Below, in pieces: positions 15,751 through 63,909 of a stretch of 64,000 nt of DNA (position 1 is the first letter of the stretch; the number at the start of each line of letters is the position of its first letter). The DNA is taken from assembly GCA_044892525.1 (NCBI GenBank), contig CM097888.1, positions 53,878,001-53,942,000 of the forward strand. The letters run 5' to 3'. The notes under the pieces are model-generated. The model saw nothing but the letters and a program-made list of their open reading frames with translations, made no database searches and was not told where the DNA came from. The position numbers and the translations under genes are program-made. The stretch comes from Schmidtea polychroa. Its lineage: Eukaryota.

Positions 15751-16257
15751 TTTTTCTAAGCGCACAAATTCAAGAAATATAATACTATTAAAATATTATT
15801 TTTTGTATTTTTTGATTTGAAAGACAGTCATGGAAGTCAATGAGACTCACATAGGCTATTCCATATTTTATGTTTCACTGAAAGAAAAATAAAAGTGAAG
15901 TTTCCCAAAGCATTTATTGGACTTTTAGTGTCTAATTGAAAGTCAACAAATGCAGGCGTTGATAAAATATATTACTAAGTGTTACATTTAAAATTATAAA
16001 TAATTCTAATTTACATGAACACCGCTGAGCTAGTAGTAAAAAAGATAATTTAAAAATAATTAAAAAAACATGTTCAAAGGCAAGCATGAATACGTATAAT
16101 AATTATTTCAATATAGTCGGTAAAAACAAATAATATCATTAATTAATATTATTAGACGGAAAATAAGTAATTTAATTCTTATAAGCTTATTATCAAATTA
16201 GGTAATCTAATTTTGATATTAAAATACCATTTATTTTACAAAACCAAATAAAATAGT

Positions 16258-16622
16258 AAAAAAGGCCGATTGATTAAAGCACCAGCACTCAAGGCTTCCA
16301 TGAAAGCTTTGATAACTAATCTGGCGATTGTACCGAGATTGTTGATGAGTTCAGCTTTAGTCATACCGACTCCATTATCGTACAATGTCAAATTATTGGA
16401 ATCTTTATCTGGAATAACTTTAATCATTGACTCCTTTTGGCTATCCAAGACTGATTTACCCGTTAAGGTCTTATAACGAACTTTATCAAGAGCATCGCTA
16501 TCATTGAAAATCAATCCTTTAAGGAAGATTTCTTTGATTGAAAAGGTGTTGATGATTAAGCTCATCAACTGAGAGATCTCAGCTTGGAAATCAAAGGTTT
16601 CAGCTTCTCAAATTTTTGACAT
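16258..16622 (-). pseudogene. HSP90: Hsp90 N-terminal fragment, intronless, with in-frame stop
   Basis: ATG at 16622: [49 protein letters not shown]...[34 protein letters not shown] at codon 5; the FYSN motif is shortened; similarity ends around the DISMIGQFG region. Confidence 0.9.
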
Positions 16623-19069: not shown

Positions 19070-19745
19070 TACTGACTATGAATCAGCAAAGATATCGATG
19101 GTTTTTTGATATTCAGTAATTTTCGGCAAAGCCTTTTTTGAATGATTTTAATCATTATCTATTAAATTTTGAAAATATGGGGAAAAATGAATTTATTTTG
19201 TATTATATATTAATATTATTTGTCAATTTTAATTTTAATTTTTAATTTAAAATTTTAAATAATATTAAGTTTTAAGATAATTTTGATTTAAATTTTACAA
19301 GTTTTTTTAAATAAAAGTTTTTTGATAAGAATTTCTGTGCTTAATCTTTGTAATGTATTTTTGAAGGCATCTTGTATCATTAGGCATTTTGTTTCGTGTA
19401 ACAGTGGTGCTGATTTCTGTAGTATTTTCCGGTGTTCGAGATAATTACTGGTTTTGTTTTTGATGTGTTCGCTGAGTCCTGTTCGAAATGTTCTATGTGT
19501 TTCCCCTATGTACGATGCGTCGCATCTTGTGCAAATGATTTTATATATAATATTTTTTGAAAAGTAAAAACATTGTGTAGAAGAGTGGCATAGACAATCT
19601 CCACGAAACAGGTCTGATGCTGGTCTGATATATGAATCAGTAAATATATCGATGTTTTTGATATTCACTAATTCGTATTCTTTAAGCTTTTTAATAAATA
19701 TAATGGAAAAGATCAGTGGTGAAATTGGTAAAAAAGTTCTTATAA
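19070..19745 (-). mobile_element. Truncated Penelope-like element: GIY-YIG endonuclease fragment between family-A direct repeats
   Basis: ORF 19668-19288 contains IIYKIICTRCDASYIGETHRTFRTGLSEH. Repeats tatgaatcag(c/t)aaa(g/t)atatcgatg...ttttgatattca occur at ~19078 and ~19631. Confidence 0.8.
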
Positions 19746-32389: not shown

Positions 32390-33049
32390 TAGAAATTGCA
32401 CACACGATTTTTGTATTTTACTCATTAAAATTTTCTACCCTTTTCTGAATTCTATAATCAATGAAAATAATATTTAAATAATGTCTTATGTTATATATTT
32501 GTTTTAAAACAATAATTGACAGAGTTTTCTCGAAGACATAAAACATTTTTCTTTTTTAATTTAAACATAATTTTTAGAAATAAAAACGATTCACATATTT
32601 ACAGAATATAAATGTGAGAGCCATTAAAATTATTCATCACTTTCCTGTTGTTAGATTATTTCAAAAAATTAAGAAACCATTTTGTTAATTAGTTTTTTTC
32701 AAAATTGAAAATATTTTACTTAAATTAACTTATTAATTATAGTTAATTTGTCAAATAACTACAGAAAAAACAACATATATACAATGCAACGTTTATGAAA
32801 TAAGGTTGCTTATACAAATTTTCTTGATTTTTAGTTTTAAAATAAACTNNNNNNNNNNNNNNNNNNNNNNNNNNNNNNNNNNNNNNNNNNNNNNNNNNNN
32901 NNNNNNNNNNNNNNNNNNNNNNNNNNNNNNNNNNNNNNNNNNNNNNNNNNNNNNNNNNNNNNNNNNNNNNNNNNNNNNNNNNNNNNNNNNNNNNNNNNNN
33001 NNNNNNNNNNNNNNNNNNNNNNNNNNNNNNATACCCAGTGGAAATCCCA

Positions 33050-33091
33050 ATAGTAGACTAATTTCGAGCTTTTGGCTCTCATCAGTACTAT
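33050..33091 (-). ncRNA. Complete minimal type I hammerhead ribozyme motif
   Basis: 5'-AUAGUA CUGAUGA GAGC-CAAAA-GCUC GAAA UUA GUC UACUAU-3'. Perfect 6-bp stem I, 4-bp stem II, canonical core, GUC cleavage triplet. Confidence 0.85.
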
Positions 33092-33437
33092 GCAGGAGAC
33101 GCGAAGATTTCTCTTTGCGCCAGGTAAGTATACAATATCGCTGATTCAACTCTATTGCATACTTTCCCCGGTACACTGGAAATCACATCACTTGCTTATT
33201 AGCTTGGCCAAAGATAATATGTAAACTTGTAAACATGGAGTATGAAAAATCATAATCACTTCTGCGGACTAAAAGATTAGTCAATACACAGAAACTGTTT
33301 ACAAGTGCATCCGATTACCTTTAGCATTTTTAATTTATAAAGTAATGGTGTAAAATATTTTTGTCGGATGTCTTACATTTGAATAAAATAAACTTGAATA
33401 AAAACTTACCTGGCGCGACAAGAAATCTTCGCGTCTC

Positions 33438-33476
33438 CTGCATGAGAGCCAAAAGCTCGAAACTAGTCTACTATTG
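33438..33476 (+). ncRNA. Damaged hammerhead copy (9-nt deletion of stem I 5' arm and core start)
   Basis: ctgca-tgagagccaaaagctcgaaactagtctactat; lacks tagtactga relative to the 33050 copy but keeps a perfect ACUAGU helix III palindrome. Confidence 0.7.
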
Positions 33477-33571
33477 GGATTTACATTGGGTGTCACAAAG
33501 CTTGTGCCGTTTGTTTTATTCAAGTGTAAGACATCCTACAAAAAAATTTTACACCAAAAATCTTTTAAAAT

Positions 33572-33574
<3 letters not shown>

Positions 33575-33657
<83 letters not shown>
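33575..33657. repeat. (AAT)n microsatellite
   Basis: Direct observation. Confidence 0.95.
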
Positions 33658-38696: not shown

Positions 38697-39763
38697 TGGC
38701 GACCCTGGCAATGATCAATAAAATGATCCCAGATATTTACGATGTCAGCGTCGATGTAGAAGTTTTTATTGGAGGTATTTCCAATTATGTGGACTAGAAC
38801 AATCCAGTCAAAGGATGATAATCAAATGTTTGATCGCAAGAGAGTTGTTGCAAATTTATGAAGCAATAGAAGAAAATGAAACTTGTTTTGAAGACAGATT
38901 GAAAAAAACTTTCAAGAAGCCAACGACGTTGATAGGGGATTTTCTAACCCTCTGCAATTATGAAAAGAACAAAAATACTGCCCCAGTATATTTCGAAAAA
39001 ATAGAAAAGATGGTTGACCAAGTTCTGAAGCATAAATGTGACAAGAAAGAATTAATGTCATATCATTTGGTCCATTGAAAGAAATAAAGATGAAAATGTG
39101 ATGAGCATTGACGAAATAAAAGGAGTGATAAGGTCGATGATATAGACATTGAAGTATCCGGAATTTCAGTTCTAAATAGAAGGAAGGAAACGTTTGCAAG
39201 TATTGTCAAAACAAGACAAGAATTTGCCGATAGACAGAACCAAAACAGAAATTTTACAAATTCACAACGGAGTGAACAAAGATATGATTCAACACCGAGG
39301 ATGAAAGCCGATAATTTCCAGAACAAATTCCAACAAAGAGAAATGCTGGTTAGAAACAGACCAGTTATTACATGTTGGAATTGTCAGGAGATGGGTCATA
39401 TGAGTCGAGAATGTCGGAAACCAAGGATTCAGAAATGCTTCCAATGTTGAAAAGAAGGGCACCAATCCAGAGAGTGCAATCAGAGAGCACATAATGCAGA
39501 GATGAGATGTTTTGCGTATTGGACACAACAGAAGAGAATGCCCATCAATATTGTGCTCAGGATGCGGTAGAAGAGGCCACTTACGATTTCAATGCTGGAA
39601 TCAGACAAACCGAAAAAGATACGCAGACGAGCGTGGACCAACGAGACGGACACAAGTAGCCGCGTTTCAGACTGAAGCCGAGAACGACGAAAAGATCTCA
39701 TGTCAAGACGAAGACTACCCAAACCAAGAATCTTTAGACGAGATGATTGGGGCAATAAATTAA
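38696..39763 (+). pseudogene. Frameshifted gag with four tandem CCHC zinc knuckles; pol absent
   Basis: CWNCQEMGHMSREC, CFQC*KEGHQSREC, a frameshifted CFA..GHNRREC, and CSGCGRRGHLRFQC; stops and frameshifts upstream. Confidence 0.85.
38697..38709 (+). promoter_or_regulatory. Putative primer-binding site TGGCGACCCTGGC
   Basis: TGG complementary to tRNA CCA directly after the LTR-terminal CA; TGGCGACC would fit a tRNA-Arg-type 3' end (inference). Confidence 0.65.
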
Positions 39764-41279: not shown

Positions 41280-42230
41280 TATTCCGCATCCCTCGATTTT
41301 ATTTAAATCTTTTCTTTTAATACGATTTGCTCAATAATTGGATGATTCTTTGATTGAATGCGTTTTGCAAAACATTTATATAGTAAGTTTGGCGCTTTAT
41401 TCATCATCAAATGTAAAGGTCCAAGAGGAAACTATATTAGTTTGAGCGTGGAAAATGAAATAAAGCCAATGAACAGGATAAAAAATGTGGTAGAAAATAC
41501 TTTCTCAACAATATATAAGAACCGGAAAGACATCAAATCCGACCTTTATGAAAATCCGCAACAAAAGAAATTCAAAATGATAAGAAATGGAAAACACAAT
41601 GATCTTGACCAAGTTGTAATAACATTTGTCAACGAAGCCCTCATACAGGAAAAAGCAAAGCAATTGAGCAACAATATAACAATTGATAATCTTTGACCCA
41701 GTTCAGGTTGGCTTCAAAGATTAAAAAATTGAAATGTTCTGAGATGGAAATGTCTAACTGGGAATGCTGCTCAAGCTTATGAAAGTGTTGCAAATGAATG
41801 GCTAGTAAATGCATTTCGGGCATTACTTTTACTTTATAATAAAAATGATATTTTCAATGCTAAAACCAAAAAGGAGCGCATCGCACGAATGGGTTGTACT
41901 AATATGGCTGGTTTGGAATGAAAGAAACCCTTCAATTATTGGACTATCAAAGAATCCAAGTTGCTATAAAAATATTACAAGCTTTCCAGTTGACTACGAA
42001 AATAATAAAAAACCTTTATTTGAAAAATGGCTCATTGAACTAAATAAGAAGTTTAATCAAGAACACAAAAGTTCAGCTCATGGAAAAAGTGAAAAAGAAT
42101 AAATAAAATCCATTAGATTGGAATGTTTCCACCAAATCTTACATCGACAATAAACATTTTATCAAAGGTTTGGGATACAAAACTAACTTCAACACTAATT
42201 GAAAACTGTTTCCATAAATCTGGATTCATT
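41280..42230 (+). pseudogene. pogo/Tigger transposase remnant (CENP-B-like HTH plus DDE fragments)
   Basis: STIYKNRKDI..RNGKHNDLDQ..IQEKAKQL..SSGWLQR, then NMAGLE..IIGLSKNPSCYKNITSFPVDYENNKK, and VWD..TLIENCFHKSGF. Confidence 0.85.
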
Positions 42231-57515: not shown

Positions 57516-59279
57516 GTGAGTGAGGAAATTGTCAACATTTTTAAGTATTATTTGTTTATTTAAATAGATTTCTTGTAATCTAAGAGTCAATTGATAAAAA
57601 TTTATAAGTAAAATTTTAATTGTGCATTTTGTGCATTATTAATTGATTATAACAATTTTAATTTTAAATGTTTAATAGCACTCTATTTTAGGTAGACATC
57701 GATAGGATTTGATATTTAAATGCAATCTTTTAAAAAGGCATAAATGAAAAAAATATACAAGTCAGATTTGAACGGTGACTTCTAAAAGATGCAGTTGGTG
57801 TGAGATATACAAGACGTCGAGACAGATTTTATGGAATGCAGATTTTTGCGTACCGAAGCCATCAAAATGAAGAATATACATTAAACAACTGATAAATCTG
57901 CCTTTTTACTAATAAGAAAGCTGTAAAATTATTTCATTTAAATATTAACGTCGTTATTAACTACTGACATAATTTAAATTTCTGTTTAAATTATCCGCAA
58001 TAATGTTTGATGTTTAAAACGATGAATAATTATCCATGTAGATTTAATGGATAGTATTTCAAAAAATTTCTACTTACAGATTTTGCCCCTGATTTCATTA
58101 ATTACAGAATTATATATAATTAAATATCAAAATAACTTTTAATCCAATTATTTTTTGGTAAGCAACTCAAAATTCAATTTAAACAAATTTCGAAAAAAAT
58201 AAATTACCATAATTTTTTTTTTCACGCGTTCGATTTGACTTTATATATATAAATTGAAAAGATAAAATCACTAAAAATCATTTCGATTTCAAAAATAATT
58301 TTTTAATTTGTCGATAAATTTAAAATTTTGAAACTGATACGATCTAAAAATGGGGAAATATATTTTATTTTTTGGCTTTATTTCATGAAAATAACAAAAT
58401 GGTCAAATTACAATTATGTACATGTCAGAGATTAAAACAAAAATTAATTAAAATTTTTAAATTAAAAATGTTGAATTTTTGATTAAATTTAAGAATTGTT
58501 ATGGAAAATGTAAAATTAATTGAATTAAATAATATATATAAATATACTTTTCAAATTTAAAAATTTTTTTTAAAATTTTTAATAAAATAAAATTTACTTG
58601 CGTTGGTAAGAATAAAAATGTTTTTCCTGAAAATTGAAATTGGAAATATAATTTTCAATAAGAGTTCAAATATTTCAACATGATATAACAAGCTATAAAA
58701 TACATTTGAGAAAACAATTTCGCCAATTTTCTCGTTCGTGATATAATGTAATTTCAATATATTTATTTTCAGTTTCAAAAACATTTATTATATATCATTT
58801 GTTTTAATTTGCCTAATTCTTTTTTATTTTCTATACAATAATAAACCTTGATCTTTTAAACGCCAATTGAAAAGAATTGATACTGATTCCTCGTCATTTA
58901 TTCTTTCCGCTACTTTTAATATTATTTTCTCTTTTTTCTAGGTCGTTCATTTAAGGATGAAATAGATATACAATTAATAACAATTAGAAATTCATAATAA
59001 AATATTCGACCCTTACAACATTTGTTTATCCTGTATATTTTTTTCAATAATAATGTGATTGGTGTGAATTGAATACTTGACTTTAAATCTTACTGGTTGA
59101 GTTTCATTATTTTAATAAAGGACATGTGAGTCAGATTATTAACTATTTTTCTACCGAAACAATTATAATAACCCATCGAAACGTAGAATTGACTAGCAAA
59201 GGAAATAGATCGAATCAAAAATTAATATTTATTAATACTGTTTATCTTGACAATTATAAGAAATACGACATAAACTTAC

Positions 59280-59556
59280 CATTTTCTAATTCATAACAAA
59301 TTAGGGGAGGTTTAGCCTTCTTTCTGCATTTGATGATGACAATTGTTATGAAACTGCCTAAGGCTAAGACGCTGATTATAACTGCTATAGTTATAACTAT
59401 CATTTCTTTATTAATTTTCTCTTTGTTTTCGTTCGAATGAACATTATTCTTTGGCGATAAAGGCTGCGAATCATCAATGGTGATTTGGAGTTCTATACTT
59501 GATGACTTTGGGGGGTTTCCTCTATCTTTACCAATAATTACCAATTTGTGAATACC
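59280..59556 (-). CDS. Cadherin-family gene exon: end of last EC repeat, transmembrane helix, start of cytoplasmic tail
   Basis: tatatttcag acceptor, G|GTAAGT donor; GIHKLVIIGKDRGNPPKSSSIELQITIDD (A.D.G.P..S motif), hydrophobic MIVITIAVIISVLALGSFITIVII, then KCRKK. Confidence 0.85.
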
Positions 59557-59734: not shown

Positions 59735-60160
59735 ATTGGGTCAAAGATTATCAAATGTTATATTGTTGCTCAATTGCTTTGCTTTTTCCTGTATGAGGAC
59801 TTCGTTGACAAATGTTATTACAACTTGGTCAAGATCATTGTGTTTTCCATTTCTTATCATTTTGAATTTCTTTTGTTGCGAATTTTCATAAAGGTTGGAT
59901 TTGATGTCTTTCCGGTTCTTATATATTGTTGAGAAAGTATTTTCTACCACATTTTTTATCCTGTTCATTGGCTTTATTTCATTTTCCATGGTCAAACTAA
60001 TATATTTTCTTCTTGGACCTTTGAATTTGATGATGAATAGTAAGCGTCAAGCTTACTATATAAATGTTTTGCAAAACGCATTCAATCAAAGAATCATCCA
60101 ATTATTGAGCAAATCGTATTAAAAGTAAATATATAAATAAAATCGAGGGGTGCCGGAATA
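59735..60160 (-). pseudogene. Second copy of the Tigger 5' fragment, inside the cadherin intron
   Basis: Nearly identical to 41280-41700 in reverse orientation. Confidence 0.85.
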
Positions 60161-62439
60161 CCTTCATAATAAATCCATTTAAAACCTATTTGGTTATGCA
60201 AATTTTATAATTCAAAAATTCATTTGTTTAAATGATGATTTTAATTATATAAGTTGATAATTGTATAAATGCCAATACAGCGATAGAATTGGGGAAATCA
60301 TTTAATAATTAACTGAAATAGGTTAGTAAAATTTTATTTCAAATTTCCTTTCCTATTAACATTTCTTATAAAAATATATTGGGAAATTTACAATACAGAT
60401 AGCCATCAACAAATTTGTTCATTTAATTCAGTTGATTTGTCATGAAACGACATTGGGACAGAATGTATAGCTGCCAACAAATGCGCAATCATAATTACTT
60501 CTGTCCATNNNNNNNNNNNNNNNNNNNNNNNNNNNNNNNNNNNNNNNNNNNNNNNNNNNNNNNNNNNNNNNNNNNNNNNNNNNNNNNNNNNNNNNNNNNN
60601 NNNNNNNNNNNNNNNNNNNNNNNNNNNNNNNNNNNNNNNNNNNNNNNNNNNNNNTATTTATTTTGTTTTAATGGAATAAAATTCATCCATTGCTTCATTA
60701 ACTAGAATTTGAGGAATGTTTCTGATGTATTATTATTATTGCTCTTATTTTCATTTTAGATTTATCCAAGTTTAATTGAAACTAAAATCTCCCTTTTTCA
60801 TCAGTCATGCGTGACGTTTCAAATATTGTTTAGATTCTTAATTTCATGATTAATCGTTCTCCATAGGAAAAGAAATATCAAGTTAACTGGATTACTGAAC
60901 CTTAACTAAGGAAAAAATTTCCTTTTATCTTATTTACACTTTTTGATAATTTAGTTTTTTTTATAAATTACACTCACGTATCATATTGTTTGTATCTTTA
61001 ATTAACGATTTTCGCGTTTCTTTAATATTGTTTTATTGCTCGAAGTTCTAACAGTGAAATTGAAAAATGATAACTCTTCATGTTCGAAATATAAAATTCC
61101 TTAAATTCATATTAAATTACATAATTTCAAACAAATGTATAATTATTATATTAATGACCAATAAAACTGATTAGAAAGACATTCATTCTTACTAAGTGTT
61201 TTTTACAGCATTAAAAAACTGACTAATTAGAAATTATTTTCAAAAAAATAGTAAAATAATAAAATTTTAAAAGATTTGAATAAAATAAATTTAAAAAAAA
61301 TTAAATTAAATTAAAAGAAATCAATTTGAAATGAAAAAAAAACATTTGAAAATTTTGCCAATACATTTCAGAAGTAAAACAAAAAATTAAATTTTTATTT
61401 CAATTTTGGAAAATAAAAAAAATTATTTTTATATTAATCCGAGATCAATGGTAGTAATCAGGGAATTTAGAAGAAATTATCTTTCATGCAATTTTACCAG
61501 GGTTCCCAATGTGGAATATATTAACTATTGTAATTAGACATTTTCTAGAATACTAAATAATTTTCCCACTTTTAAATACTATTGCAATCTGCCTTGTCCT
61601 TGTTCATGGATATTTCATTTAGGATATTTTTTTATTCTTATTTTTTNNNNNNNNNNNNNNNNNNNNNNNNNNNNNNNNNNNNNNNNNNNNNNNNNNNNNN
61701 NNNNNNNNNNNNNNNNNNNNNNNNNNNNNNNNNNNNNNNNNNNNNNNNNNNNNNNNNNNNNNNNNNNNNNNNNNNNNNNNNNNNNNNNNNNNNNNNNNNN
61801 NNNGTATCACTTATATTTAGAGTTGCAGCTAGAAATTCATTAGTAAAAATAAATATTAAAACTATAAGGGAATGCAAAGTAAATAAAAGAAATATATATT
61901 AATGTATTAATATATAATAAGGAATGGAGTGAAACATATTTGACAGAAAGGTATTCGGCAGGCAGAACAAATGAATTTTGTTCTTTTCTCAATTTTTAAT
62001 GTTGAGCACATTACAGACTAACAGTCGACTTCTTTTATTCGCATACGGTAACTTATACGAATTTCTTGACGCAATAGAATAGAGTGAAAGGTAGGGAGTG
62101 ACCGATGAGAATATATATCCTAACTGTAAAGGATAACTTAAAAGGTTAACGCGTGCGTGGGAATAATACATTAATAATAATGTATACTGGAGTAATAGTC
62201 CAACAGTTGATTTTCACTTATATATTATTTCTCTATTTCTATAATTCTATTAACAATACCAGCTCATTAAGTTGTTTAAATGTTTAAAAATTTTATGATT
62301 ACAAAAAAAGATCAAAACTGAAAAGAAATTCACTGAAAATTGAATAGTAGTTTTATTTTAATTACGGGTGAAAATATTTCAACTCTAAATGATTTCACTC
62401 GTGGGAAACAATAAATTTCTATTGCAAACAGAATTTTAC

Positions 62440-62625
62440 CTGATGTTCGGACTTCAATTTCCTATTTAACTTTACACTTTGTCGATTCCTATCAATCGAG
62501 AAATACTGAGCTATAATGCCGGGTTTGATTGATAAATCGACAACTGCATTAGCACCGGAATCTTTGTCTTCGATGAAAAGGGCAATCAATTCGTGTCTGA
62601 CATATTCCTTGTAGGAAACTTTTGT
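62440..62625 (-). CDS. Cadherin-family gene exon: first two-thirds of an EC repeat
   Basis: ttctattccag acceptor, CAG|GTAAAA donor, 186 nt phase 0-0; TKVSY...IEDKDSGANAVV (DxDxGxN motif)...YFSID...VKLNRKLKSEHQ; joins in frame to 59556. Confidence 0.85.
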
Positions 62626-63018
62626 CTGGAATAGAAAAATTTTAATCATTGCTATTACTAAAAACAAAGTAATAAATAATAGTTAATAAAACAAATTCAC
62701 TTATTTTTCGGGAACGAAAAAATATTAAATTAATCAGCTGAAAGATAATTATTCAAATAGTGCATCCTGTTATTCGATGACATTTCTAATGTTAAACTAG
62801 TTTCGAGCTTATCCAATCCGATATCGAGCCGAATAATCCGGTAATTATATCCAATGATATCATCACTCCATCACTAAGCTATATCATTTCTTTATCTTTC
62901 TTATCAAATCTTTAAATATATTTGACATTTTGCAAATTATTCAAAAAAGAAACTAATTTACCATTAGAAAATGTATTGATTCCGCCAATTATCAATATTC
63001 AATTTAATTACTCTAAAT

Positions 63019-63469: not shown

Positions 63470-63909
63470 CTCTAAATCGTGTAATTCATTTAATTATTTT
63501 TATTTTTTATATTAAATAATTAATTTATTATTGTGCTCTAAAATATATCTATTTTGGAAACTAAAAATTCTAAGTTGTTCTCTAAAAAGATTTAAAAGAT
63601 TACATAATTATTTTAATAGAGCTGTTGTTTAAAATGAGCTATAATTTTTATTAGATGAAATCCTAAAATAGATTATCGAAAGCTTAAATAAATTAAATGG
63701 AATTTTAAAATTTTTCATCTTAATTCTAAATNNNNNNNNNNNNNNNNNNNNNNNNNNNNNNNNNNNNNNNNNNNNNNNNNNNNNNNNNNNNNNNNNNNNN
63801 NNNNNNNNNNNNNNNNNNNNNNNNNNNNNNNNNNNNNNNNNNNNNNNNNNNNNNNNNNNNNNNNNNNNNNNNNNNNNNNNNNNNNNNNNTATTTATATTA
63901 GAGCACACC

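What the first reader, a model, noticed from the sequence alone, without database searches (positions are those of the whole stretch)
33031..33556. Intact minimal hammerhead ribozyme with a divergently oriented, complementary-damaged twin in a foldback structure
Seen: the minus strand 33091-33050 reads AUAGUA-CUGAUGA-GAGC(CAAAA)GCUC-GAAA-UUA-GUC|UACUAU, with all core nucleotides and a perfect 6-bp stem I. The inverted copy at 33438-33476 has lost 9 nt of stem I and core but keeps the perfect ACUAGU helix III palindrome. Known: Penelope-like elements and retrozymes carry minimal type I hammerheads with very short palindromic helix III that work better as dimers, and they often have inverted terminal repeats. 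Inference: this is a short non-autonomous PLE/retrozyme-like unit. The intact ribozyme is on the same strand as the cadherin and candidate exons, so it could cleave a host pre-mRNA if the locus is intronic.
Basis: partly seen in the sequence, partly recalled or inferred. Interest (0 to 1): 0.8.

Follow-up and report, generated by a model that had tools for sequence, protein, structure and literature searches.

The report
Decayed hammerhead retrozyme insertion, head-to-head
The hammerhead ribozyme motif is real, but it belongs to an old copy of a very abundant ~376-base non-coding retroelement of a known kind (animal "retrozyme", moved by Penelope-like elements). Its broken mirror twin is the usual by-product of how such elements insert.

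Summary
Minus strand 33091-33050 is a complete type I hammerhead: full core, 6-bp helix I, 4-bp helix II and a very short palindromic helix III. The inverted copy on the plus strand lacks exactly 9 nt, which are the 5' strand of helix I plus C3-U4-G5.

The "spacer" between the arms is part of the repeat. Public contigs of the same species show thousands of copies and a head-to-tail junction that gives a unit of about 376 nt.

The locus is one near-full unit on the minus strand (33403 to 33031, running into an N run). It abuts, head-to-head, a 5'-truncated inverted copy (33404-33557) that ends in AT-rich (TAA)n DNA. This matches published animal non-LTR retrozymes and Penelope-like-element insertion structures.

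- **Age:** both copies are decayed.
- **Ribozyme access:** a transcript across the whole locus is predicted to bury the ribozyme in a ~90-bp foldback.
- **Host gene:** the nearest same-strand cadherin-like ORF is 26 kb away, so cleavage of a host pre-mRNA is unsupported.

One oddity remains. A 13-nt look-alike of the U1 snRNA 5' end plus a GNRA hairpin lies upstream of the ribozyme, and this module is the only part shared with a second species.

This scan has noted the same family many times on other DNA of this genome.

The parts
33050..33091 (-). Type I hammerhead motif: helix I AUAGUA/UACUAU, core CUGAUGA, helix II GAGC-CAAAA-GCUC with the G10.1-C11.1 pair, GAAA, and helix III/loop UUAG with A15.1-U16.1.
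   Evidence: Rfam HH9 at 20.2 bits, below threshold.
33055..33056 (-). Predicted self-cleavage site GUC|U, between C at 33056 and U at 33055.
   Evidence: Read from the motif. Not shown experimentally. The contigs carry no end information (table 6: none).
33100..33119 (-). GNRA hairpin CGCAAAGA-GAAA-UCUUCGCG with one A x C mismatch in this copy. The family majority letter at 33116 makes the 8-bp stem perfect.
   Evidence: table 3: 33116 T>C in about 98% of depth in runs X1 and X6.
33119..33131 (-). AUACUUACCUGGC, a look-alike of the U1 snRNA 5' end. The opposite strand reads a perfect 5' splice site, CCAG|GUAAGU. It is predicted to pair in cis with 33160-33171.
   Evidence: The match to U1 is from memory, not tested against this species' own U1. 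No U1 Rfam match even at E up to 10.
33031..33403 (-). Copy A, a near-full repeat unit. Its 5' end has an 11-nt terminal duplication at 33394-33403. It runs through the 33131-33393 body, the U1-like strand, the GNRA hairpin and the hammerhead. Its last ~20-33 nt lie under the N run.
   Evidence: high depth over all of 33031-33390, and a joint 33373->33031 with 33 letters between. (pairs I2, I4). (fold z -7.55).
33404..33557 (+). Copy B, an inverted 5'-truncated copy that starts at ACUUACCUGG. It contains the GNRA hairpin, the dead hammerhead, the 3' hairpin and a 52-nt run-on.
33438..33476 (+). Dead hammerhead of copy B. The 9 nt AUAGUACUG (helix I 5' strand plus C3-U4-G5) are missing between 33441 and 33442. 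It keeps the perfect ACUAGU palindrome.
   Evidence: One contig table 4 has an extra 9 nt, ATAGTAGTG, at 33441, so the loss is private to this copy.
33496..33508 (+). AC-rich 3' hairpin CACAAAGCUUGUG. Many other genomic copies end at about 33505.
   Evidence: table 7: 38 contigs in X6 and 5 in X1 diverge into unrelated AT-rich DNA after 33505. This resembles the AC-rich stem-loop at which a PLE reverse transcriptase initiates (PMC11167929); that is a resemblance only.
33506..33557 (+). Run-on ('tail') of copy B past the usual 3' end. It equals the 5' part of the unit (33393-33346 on the minus strand).
   Evidence: I2: 48 nt, 92%. The head-to-tail junction has the same order of parts.
33574..33657 (.). 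(TAA)n microsatellite and AT-rich DNA directly after copy B. Probable insertion target.
   Evidence: PLE bias toward AT-rich and microsatellite DNA (PMC8557442; PMC11167929).
32849..33030 (.). N run that cuts off the 3' end of copy A. It was not filled. It is one of 10 such runs in the window.

Best explanation
The locus is a single old insertion of a very abundant, ORF-less, ~376-nt hammerhead-bearing retroelement. That makes it an animal non-LTR retrozyme, that is, a non-autonomous derivative of Penelope-like elements (PLEs). Copy A (minus strand, 33403 to 33031 and into the N run) is a near-complete unit. Copy B (plus strand, 33404-33557) is a 5'-truncated copy joined head-to-head to it, and it runs 52 nt past the usual 3' end into (TAA)n DNA.

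Inferred life cycle of the family:
1. Multimeric transcripts are cut by the hammerhead at GUC|U. Helix III forms between two neighbouring ribozymes through the ACUAGU palindrome.
2. The unit-length RNA is circularised by a host RNA ligase into a highly self-paired circle.
3. That RNA is copied into AT-rich DNA by a PLE reverse transcriptase/GIY-YIG endonuclease acting in trans. Priming on both strands and internal initiation by that enzyme produce tails, partial tandems and inverted truncated copies.

At this locus the element is a fossil. Copy A differs from the family majority at more than 20 listed places. These include C15.2 to U in helix III and a mismatch in the GNRA hairpin. Copy B has lost the helix I 5' strand and three core bases. 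The foldback is a by-product of insertion and not a working device. In a read-through transcript it would sequester the one intact ribozyme.
For: Shown here:
- The motif is intact and beyond chance.
- The family is multicopy: 3713 contigs laid in DNA-like run X6 and 340 in RNA-labelled run X1, with depth across all of 33031-33390, so the 'spacer' is element.
- A head-to-tail junction (33373 back to 33031 with 33 letters that equal the reverse complement of copy B's 33496-33528) appears in an RNA-labelled contig (X2, 322 nt, depth 81.7). Similar junctions appear in X6. Together they give a ~376-nt period.
- Many copies end at about 33505 and begin about 14 nt beyond 33373, then diverge into unrelated AT-rich DNA. 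This shows dispersed insertions with defined ends (table 7).
- Several opposite-strand joints at different positions occur in other copies (table 5).
- There is no ORF of 75 aa or more apart from read-through of N. GC is 35%.
- Unit RNA folds at -110.7 kcal/mol against -73.5 for shuffles, z -7.55.
- No variant of 5% share or more is listed inside the core or helices I/II in organism A. The 85-nt ribozyme module is kept in a second species.

From the literature:
- Animal retrozymes are 150-450-bp, low-GC tandem units with canonical type I hammerheads, expressed as 170-400-nt self-paired circRNAs (PMC7229834).
- They are related to PLE pLTRs (bioRxiv 10.64898/2026.07.22.740005).
- PLE insertions often carry an adjacent inverted 5'-truncated copy, tails and a microsatellite bias (PMC8557442).
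- Hammerheads in pairs on opposite strands 100-700 bp apart were reported (PMC4209133).
- A PLE-type GIY-YIG ORF fragment lies in the same window at 19288-19668(-).
Against: - No cleavage, circle or RNA end was shown. The runs are assembled contigs without direction or ends, and the junction also stands in DNA-like runs, so it may reflect tandem DNA and not circular RNA.
- Rfam's curated threshold is not met (20.2 against 52 bits).
- No compensatory covariation in helices I/II could be counted, because individual copies could not be retrieved.
- No autonomous PLE sharing this module was identified.
- No target-site duplication can be read, because one end is under N.
- Whether A and B came from one insertion event or two is not decided. 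They share no private variants at the places that could be checked.
Confidence: 0.85

Rival explanations
1. A functional U1-mimic or splicing-related RNA. The AUACUUACCUGGC segment with its GNRA hairpin is presented by the (circular) RNA to bind 5' splice sites or U1 partners. Alternatively it records capture of a U1 5' end by template switching. In this reading the hammerhead only processes the RNA.
For: A 13-nt identity to the U1 5' end lies at 33131-33119(-), and copy B has 12 of 13. The family shows no listed variants in 33120-33129. In organism B, similarity to this unit starts exactly at 33129 and ends near 33045, so the U1-like 10-mer, hairpin and hammerhead are the only part shared between species (tables 3, 7, 8). 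The same module was noted repeatedly elsewhere in this genome (leads only).
Against: No Sm site is evident, and there is no U1 Rfam match even at E up to 10. The segment is internal to the hammerhead-processed RNA and not at its 5' end. It is predicted to be base-paired in cis with 33160-33171, and the family variant 33169 C>T improves that stem, so it may simply be one strand of a hairpin. A 10-13-mer is a small target. No paper in the library connects U1 with PLE or retrozyme hammerheads.
Confidence: 0.05
2. A foldback or MITE-type DNA transposon whose terminal inverted repeats happen to carry hammerhead motifs.
For: Two ~95-nt inverted arms, 93-94% complementary, flank ~274 nt. A very stable DNA/RNA foldback is predicted.
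Against: The arms are not termini. Copy B continues 60-115 nt beyond arm I1, and copy A runs into the N run. The interior is the same repeat as the arms' own family, in head-to-tail register. Other copies end at about 33505 and about 33387, not at arm ends. Inverted joints in other copies sit at many different positions. No target-site duplication is visible.
Confidence: 0.03
3. A host-serving intronic ribozyme that cleaves a cadherin pre-mRNA.
For: The intact hammerhead is on the minus strand, as are the cadherin-domain ORF at 62419-62667 and the transmembrane-like ORF at 59254-59544. Intronic type I hammerheads (HH9) exist in amniotes, and HH9 is the best Rfam match.
Against: It lies 26 kb downstream of the last recognisable cadherin ORF, with a Tc1 element, a gag-like ORF and other repeats between. 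It is one decayed copy among thousands. Helix III cannot form within a monomer, because a 2-nt hairpin loop is sterically forbidden, and there is no same-strand partner nearby. The foldback buries it. In Xenopus, retrozymes are depleted from introns.
Confidence: 0.03
4. A plain satellite repeat that carries a hammerhead motif but is not retrotransposed. Copies spread only by DNA-level amplification.
For: Head-to-tail junctions stand in DNA-like runs. Classical hammerhead satellites (newt satellite 2, Schistosoma Sm-alpha) were first described this way.
Against: Many copies are dispersed, with defined ends running into unrelated AT-rich DNA. 5'-truncated and inverted junctions are common. Those classical satellites are now classed as retrozymes (PMC7229834).
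Confidence: 0.04

Closest known systems
Metazoan non-LTR retrozymes (Cervera & de la Pena 2020, PMC7229834)
   Same: Both have a canonical type I hammerhead with 6-bp helix I, 4-bp helix II and a tiny palindromic helix III. Both have an ORF-less, low-GC unit of a few hundred nt (here ~376; mussel 350-390), head-to-tail copies, thousands of copies and a highly self-paired predicted RNA.
   Different: Circular RNA and cleavage are not shown here. This locus is a single decayed unit plus an inverted fragment, not an array. The U1-like 13-mer and GNRA hairpin upstream of the ribozyme are not mentioned in that paper.
Penelope-like element pLTR hammerheads and PLE insertion structures (PMC4209133, PMC8557442, PMC11167929)
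   Same: Both show an inverted 5'-truncated copy directly abutting the 5' end, a run-on 'tail' past the usual 3' end, an AT-rich or microsatellite target and an AC-rich stem-loop near the 3' end. Pairs of hammerheads on opposite strands 100-700 bp apart were reported.
   Different: There is no RT/GIY-YIG ORF in the element. The hammerhead is the canonical type, not the min-HHR typical of metazoan PLE pLTRs. The tail is 52 nt, against the usual 30-40.
Rfam Hammerhead_HH9 (RF02275), intronic amniote hammerhead
   Same: It is the best Rfam match. It shares the core, a CAAAA-type loop 2 and a 6-bp helix I closed by an internal loop and an outer stem.
   Different: The score is 20.2 bits against a gathering score of 52. 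Helix III here is 1-2 bp against 3 bp plus a loop. This element is a mobile repeat, not a conserved single-copy intronic element.
SINEs with snRNA-derived heads (SINEU) and U1 snRNA
   Same: The first 13 nt match the U1 5' end.
   Different: Nothing beyond 13 nt is U1-like. There are no U1 stem-loops and no Sm site, and there is no Rfam U1 hit.

Membership tests
Hammerhead ribozyme, canonical metazoan type I | Conserved core: C3 U4 G5 A6 N7 G8 A9, G12 A13 A14, the A15.1-U16.1 pair, and H17 at the cleavage site. | tested here: met
   CUGAUGA ... GAAA ... GUC| at 33085-33056(-). Copy B fails: C3 U4 G5 are deleted.
Hammerhead ribozyme, canonical metazoan type I | Helix I of about 6 bp, helix II of 4 bp with G10.1-C11.1, and open ends in helix I. 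| tested here: met
   AUAGUA/UACUAU and GAGC/GCUC. An outer closing stem UCCUG/UGGGA lies beyond a 1-nt bulge.
Hammerhead ribozyme, canonical metazoan type I | Helix III of 1-2 bp capped by a 2-4-nt palindromic loop (dimer-type). | tested here: met
   AUUAGU in copy A is self-complementary only with two G.U pairs. ACUAGU in copy B and in about 97% of family depth is perfect.
Hammerhead ribozyme, canonical metazoan type I | Reaches the Rfam curated gathering score. | tested here: not met
   No hit at gathering score. HH9 scores 20.2 bits against 52, E 0.023. The shortfall lies in helix III and the helix I loop of the model.
Hammerhead ribozyme, canonical metazoan type I | Self-cleavage at the H17 site. 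| not testable with these tools
   Only assembled contigs were served, and no ends are reported (table 6).
Hammerhead ribozyme, canonical metazoan type I | Stems supported by conservation or covariation across copies. | tested here: inconclusive
   Conserved: no variant of 5% share or more is listed in helices I/II or the core. Species B changes fall in loop 2, position 15.2 and flanks. No compensatory pair could be counted, and 20 further variant places were not shown.
Non-LTR retrozyme | Type I hammerhead inside an ORF-less unit of 150-450 bp with GC under 50% and no LTR, PBS or PPT. | tested here: met
   Unit of about 376 nt, GC 35%, no real ORF.
Non-LTR retrozyme | Head-to-tail tandem copies in the genome. 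| tested here: met
   Junction contigs in X6 and X2 for other copies. At this locus only a 52-nt run-on (33506-33557) is visible. The other end is under N.
Non-LTR retrozyme | Expressed as unit-length linear and circular RNA. | tested here: inconclusive
   RNA-labelled runs X1 and X2 hold the unit. A junction-spanning 322-nt contig plus two ~117-nt variants together close the circle. However, the labels are guessed, DNA carries the same junction, and contigs cannot tell a circle from a tandem.
Non-LTR retrozyme | Highly self-paired predicted RNA. | tested here: met
   -110.7 kcal/mol, z -7.55 against 100 shuffles.
Penelope-like element (autonomous) | RT plus GIY-YIG ORF between pLTRs. | tested here: not met
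   There is no ORF in or beside the unit. The only GIY-YIG-like ORF is 14 kb away at 19288-19668(-), scores 17.2 bits (below cut-off), and is not linked to the unit.
Penelope-like element (insertion signature, applies to elements moved in trans) | An inverted 5'-truncated copy abutting the 5' end, a tail extension and an AT-rich or microsatellite target. | tested here: met
   Copy A's 5' end (33403) abuts the start of copy B (33404). There is a 52-nt run-on, and (TAA)n follows.
U1 snRNA / snRNA-headed SINE | U1 stem-loops and Sm site beyond the 5' splice-site-binding end. | tested here: not met
   No RF00003 match at E up to 10 in 33031-33600. Only 13 nt match.
MITE / foldback DNA transposon | Inverted repeats at the element's termini, flanked by a target-site duplication. 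| tested here: not met
   The arms are internal to the two copies, and family ends lie elsewhere.

The most novel reading that the evidence does not exclude
The U1 5'-end look-alike (AUACUUACCUGGC) and the adjoining GNRA hairpin may be a selected part of the retrozyme RNA. With the hammerhead, they are the only segment shared between two species. Such a segment could let an abundant circular RNA engage 5' splice sites or U1-binding factors. Alternatively it could be a splice-site-sequestering hairpin inherited from the intron-bearing pLTR of a Penelope-like ancestor.
Probability: 0.06. Interest if true: 0.7.

Novelty: new member of a known kind. Interest (0 to 1): 0.28.

Why it matters
As it stands, this is an annotation point. 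It marks a decayed copy of a high-copy hammerhead retroelement. It also gives a worked example of how PLE-type insertion produces mirror-image ribozyme pairs that can be mistaken for designed foldbacks or MITEs.

The family as a whole is probably a major source of small structured, possibly circular, RNA in this animal. Summed depth suggests on the order of 10^4 copy equivalents.

The conserved U1-like module would matter only if shown to be functional. It would then link retrozyme circles to the splicing machinery.

Tried and rejected
- **Rfam at gathering score:** no hit.
- **Metagenome scan** for ACTTACCTGG...CTGATGAG...CGAAA: nine loci, all chance matches inside GC-rich bacterial-looking coding DNA.
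- **Literature search** for the ribozyme's literal sequence: no paper.
- **Other copies in the window:** none. Low-stringency blastn found only weak AT-rich matches and pattern searches found nothing further.
- **Sense-strand intron ending at helix I**, as in D. virilis Penelope (3' splice-site-like CAUAG| at 33091-33087, branch-like CUUAC inside the U1-like segment, upstream GUAAUC/GUAAGA): considered. No matching 'skip' joint appears among the listed joints of the RNA-labelled runs, so it was left as unsupported.
- **Arm B as a working partner for a dimeric ribozyme:** rejected. It is on the opposite strand and lacks C3-U4-G5.
- **The N run as a sign of a collapsed array:** not inferable. 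There are ten similar N runs in the window, and the DNA left of it does not continue the unit.
- **Organism identity:** not pursued. The runs are coded, and a sediment metagenome also holds the module.

Full report
**Observation**

On the minus strand, 33091-33050 reads AUAGUA-CUGAUGA-GAGC(CAAAA)GCUC-GAAA-UUAGUC|UACUAU. All hammerhead core positions are present. Helix I has 6 bp. Helix II has 4 bp and starts with the G10.1-C11.1 pair. The cleavage triplet is GUC.

- It is the only CUGAUGAG...CGAAA match in 64 kb on both strands, with none in 100 shuffles.
- It is the only hit of a fuller descriptor, with none in 100 simulated sequences of the same dinucleotide make-up.
- Rfam finds nothing at gathering score.
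- With the relaxed threshold the best family is Hammerhead_HH9 at 20.2 bits against a gathering score of 52 (E 0.023). The alignment shows the same core, loop 2 and helix I layout.
- The inverted copy is real: two arm pairs are 93-94% complementary, and it lacks exactly AUAGUACUG, which is the helix I 5' strand plus C3-U4-G5.

By the definitions of Cervera & De la Pena (PMC4209133), this is the 'canonical' metazoan type I form (6-bp helix I, 4-bp helix II, 1-2-bp helix III with a palindromic loop). It is not their 'minimal' PLE form.

**What the unit really is**

Contigs of four public runs were laid on 33031-33570 at 80% likeness or more. This changed the anatomy.

- In a DNA-like run of the same species (X6), 3713 contigs lie on the stretch. 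In an RNA-labelled run (X1), 340 do.
- Depth is high over all of 33031-33390, not only over the arms. The 274-nt 'spacer' therefore belongs to the repeat.
- A 322-nt contig of RNA-labelled run X2 (depth 81.7) joins 33373 back to 33031 through 33 letters. Those letters are the reverse complement of 33496-33528 in copy B. X6 has similar joints. This is a head-to-tail junction with a period of 343 + 33 = 376 nt.
- Thirty-eight X6 contigs and five X1 contigs leave the stretch after about 33505 into unrelated AT-rich DNA. Fourteen leave about 14 nt beyond 33373. The family therefore has defined ends and is dispersed.
- Several opposite-strand joints at differing positions show that inverted junctions are common in the family.

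**Reading of this locus**

- Copy A is a near-full unit on the minus strand. It runs from 33403 (with an 11-nt duplication of its own 5' end, pair I4) to 33031 and into the N run.
- Copy B starts at 33404 directly against A's 5' end, in the opposite orientation. It is truncated at ACUUACCUGG. It passes the usual 3' end at about 33505 and continues for 52 nt into the 5' part of a next unit (pair I2). It then meets AAAAA and (TAA)n.
- No other copy lies in the window.

**State of the two copies**

- Against the family majority, copy A has U for C at position 15.2 (33061). This turns the perfect ACUAGU palindrome into AUUAGU.
- Copy A also has A for G at 33116, which breaks an otherwise perfect 8-bp GNRA hairpin. 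More than 20 further differences are listed (table 3).
- In the minimum-free-energy fold of copy A's ribozyme region, CUGAU of the core pairs with AUUAG. The 33061 change plausibly favours this misfold; that is inference.
- One contig lying on copy B has an extra 9 nt, ATAGTAGTG, at 33441, where B's 9 nt are missing (table 4). The deletion is therefore private to B.
- Both copies are old and decayed. The ribozyme of A is intact by sequence only.

**RNA properties**

- Unit A has GC 35% and no ORF.
- It folds at -110.7 kcal/mol against -73.5 for shuffles, z -7.55. This is the 'highly self-paired' property reported for retrozyme circles.
- Helix III cannot close as a hairpin in a monomer, because a 2-nt loop is forbidden. 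The motif therefore depends on a second ribozyme in the same RNA, as described for most metazoan type I hammerheads.
- A minus-strand transcript over the whole locus folds into a ~90-bp foldback (-213 kcal/mol, z -16). In that fold the ribozyme of A is fully paired with the antisense of B, and the 9 extra bases bulge out.

**Comparison with what is known**

- Animal non-LTR retrozymes are ORF-less, low-GC tandem units of 150-450 bp with canonical type I hammerheads. [quoted passage not shown] Mussel units are 350-390 bp (PMC7229834).
- A 2026 preprint ties them to PLE pLTRs.
- PLE insertions are typically 5'-truncated and in partial tandem. They often have an inverted 5'-truncated copy directly at the 5' end, an optional tail at one end and a bias for microsatellite or AT-rich DNA (PMC8557442).
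- A purified PLE protein cleaves and extends both DNA strands. It initiates reverse transcription internally in an AC-rich stem-loop, which explains the tail (PMC11167929).
- The unit here has an AC-rich hairpin, CACAAAGCUUGUG, at its 3' end. This is a resemblance only.
- Pairs of PLE hammerheads on opposite strands 100-700 bp apart were already reported in Schistosoma.
- A PLE-type GIY-YIG ORF fragment lies 14 kb away in the window, so PLEs are present in this genome. I did not link it to this family.
- The locus is a member of a known kind. Cleavage and circularity remain inferred.

**The host pre-mRNA idea**

Cadherin-like ORFs on the minus strand are at 62419-62667 (Pfam Cadherin, 28.2 bits) and 59254-59544 (transmembrane-like). 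These are 26 kb from the ribozyme. A Tc1-type transposon, a gag-like ORF and other repeats lie between. Nothing shows that the locus is intronic. The foldback and the lack of a same-strand partner argue against activity in a read-through RNA.

**The unexplained part**

- On the ribozyme strand, the arm shared by A and B begins AUACUUACCUGGC (AAACUUACCUGGC in B). From my own knowledge this equals the 5' end of metazoan U1 snRNA. A GNRA hairpin follows, and then the hammerhead.
- The opposite strand reads a perfect 5' splice site.
- In a second species (run X5), similarity to this unit begins exactly at 33129 and ends near 33045. That ~85-nt module is the only shared part.
- The module's 31-mers were also found in another run of organism B and in a sediment metagenome.
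- In unit A the U1-like strand is predicted to pair with 33160-33171. The common family variant at 33169 turns a G.U pair there into A-U. It may therefore be just one strand of a conserved hairpin.
- There is no Sm site and no U1 Rfam match at E up to 10.
- No paper in the library links U1 with these elements.
- I give a functional U1-mimic reading about 5%.

**Earlier notes of this scan**

Earlier notes describe the same module and 371-373-nt tandem units on other pieces of this genome. One follow-up also called it a retroelement fragment. These are unchecked leads that agree with what I measured here. They were not used as evidence.

**Limits**

- Only assembled contigs were available, so ends, strand and circles could not be tested.
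- Individual copies could not be fetched, so covariation was not counted.
- One end of copy A is under an N run, which was left untouched.

Noticed in passing
window 19288-19668 (-): A 126-aa ORF with a PLE-type GIY-YIG/Zn-finger-like motif (Pfam GIY-YIG 17.2 bits, below cut-off). It is probably a remnant of an autonomous Penelope-like element. My descriptor found no canonical hammerhead beside it.
   Followed up: partly
window 33119-33131 (-) and 33402-33414 (+): A 13-nt look-alike of the U1 snRNA 5' end upstream of the hammerhead. It is conserved in the family, and in a second species it marks the exact boundary of the shared module. The opposite strand is a perfect 5' splice site.
   Followed up: partly
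window 62419-62667 (-) and 59254-59544 (-): A cadherin-domain ORF (Pfam 28.2 bits) and an ORF ending in a transmembrane-like stretch. These are the only host-gene-like ORFs on the ribozyme's strand, 26 kb away.
   Followed up: partly
window 16236-16568 (-): An ORF resembling the N-terminal ATPase region of HSP90 (Pfam HATPase_c_3, 17.8 bits, below cut-off). It could be an exon or a retrocopy fragment.
   Followed up: no
window 41358-41696 (+) and 59741-59995 (-): Two ORFs encode nearly the same ~85-aa peptide in opposite orientation. These are two copies of another, unidentified repeat.
   Followed up: no
window 39512-39763 (+): An ORF with CCHC zinc-knuckle motifs (gag-like). Several antisense ORFs overlap it at 38.9-39.8 kb. 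It is probably a retrotransposon remnant.
   Followed up: no
window, ten N runs (1373-1560 ... 63732-63889): The N runs are 146-220 nt long and occur about every 6 kb. The one beside the finding is therefore not a special sign of a collapsed array.
   Followed up: yes
window 33296-33356 (+): A sub-threshold Rfam match to mir-2067 (25.3 bits against a gathering score of 70) inside the retrozyme body. I take it as chance in an AT-rich hairpin.
   Followed up: no
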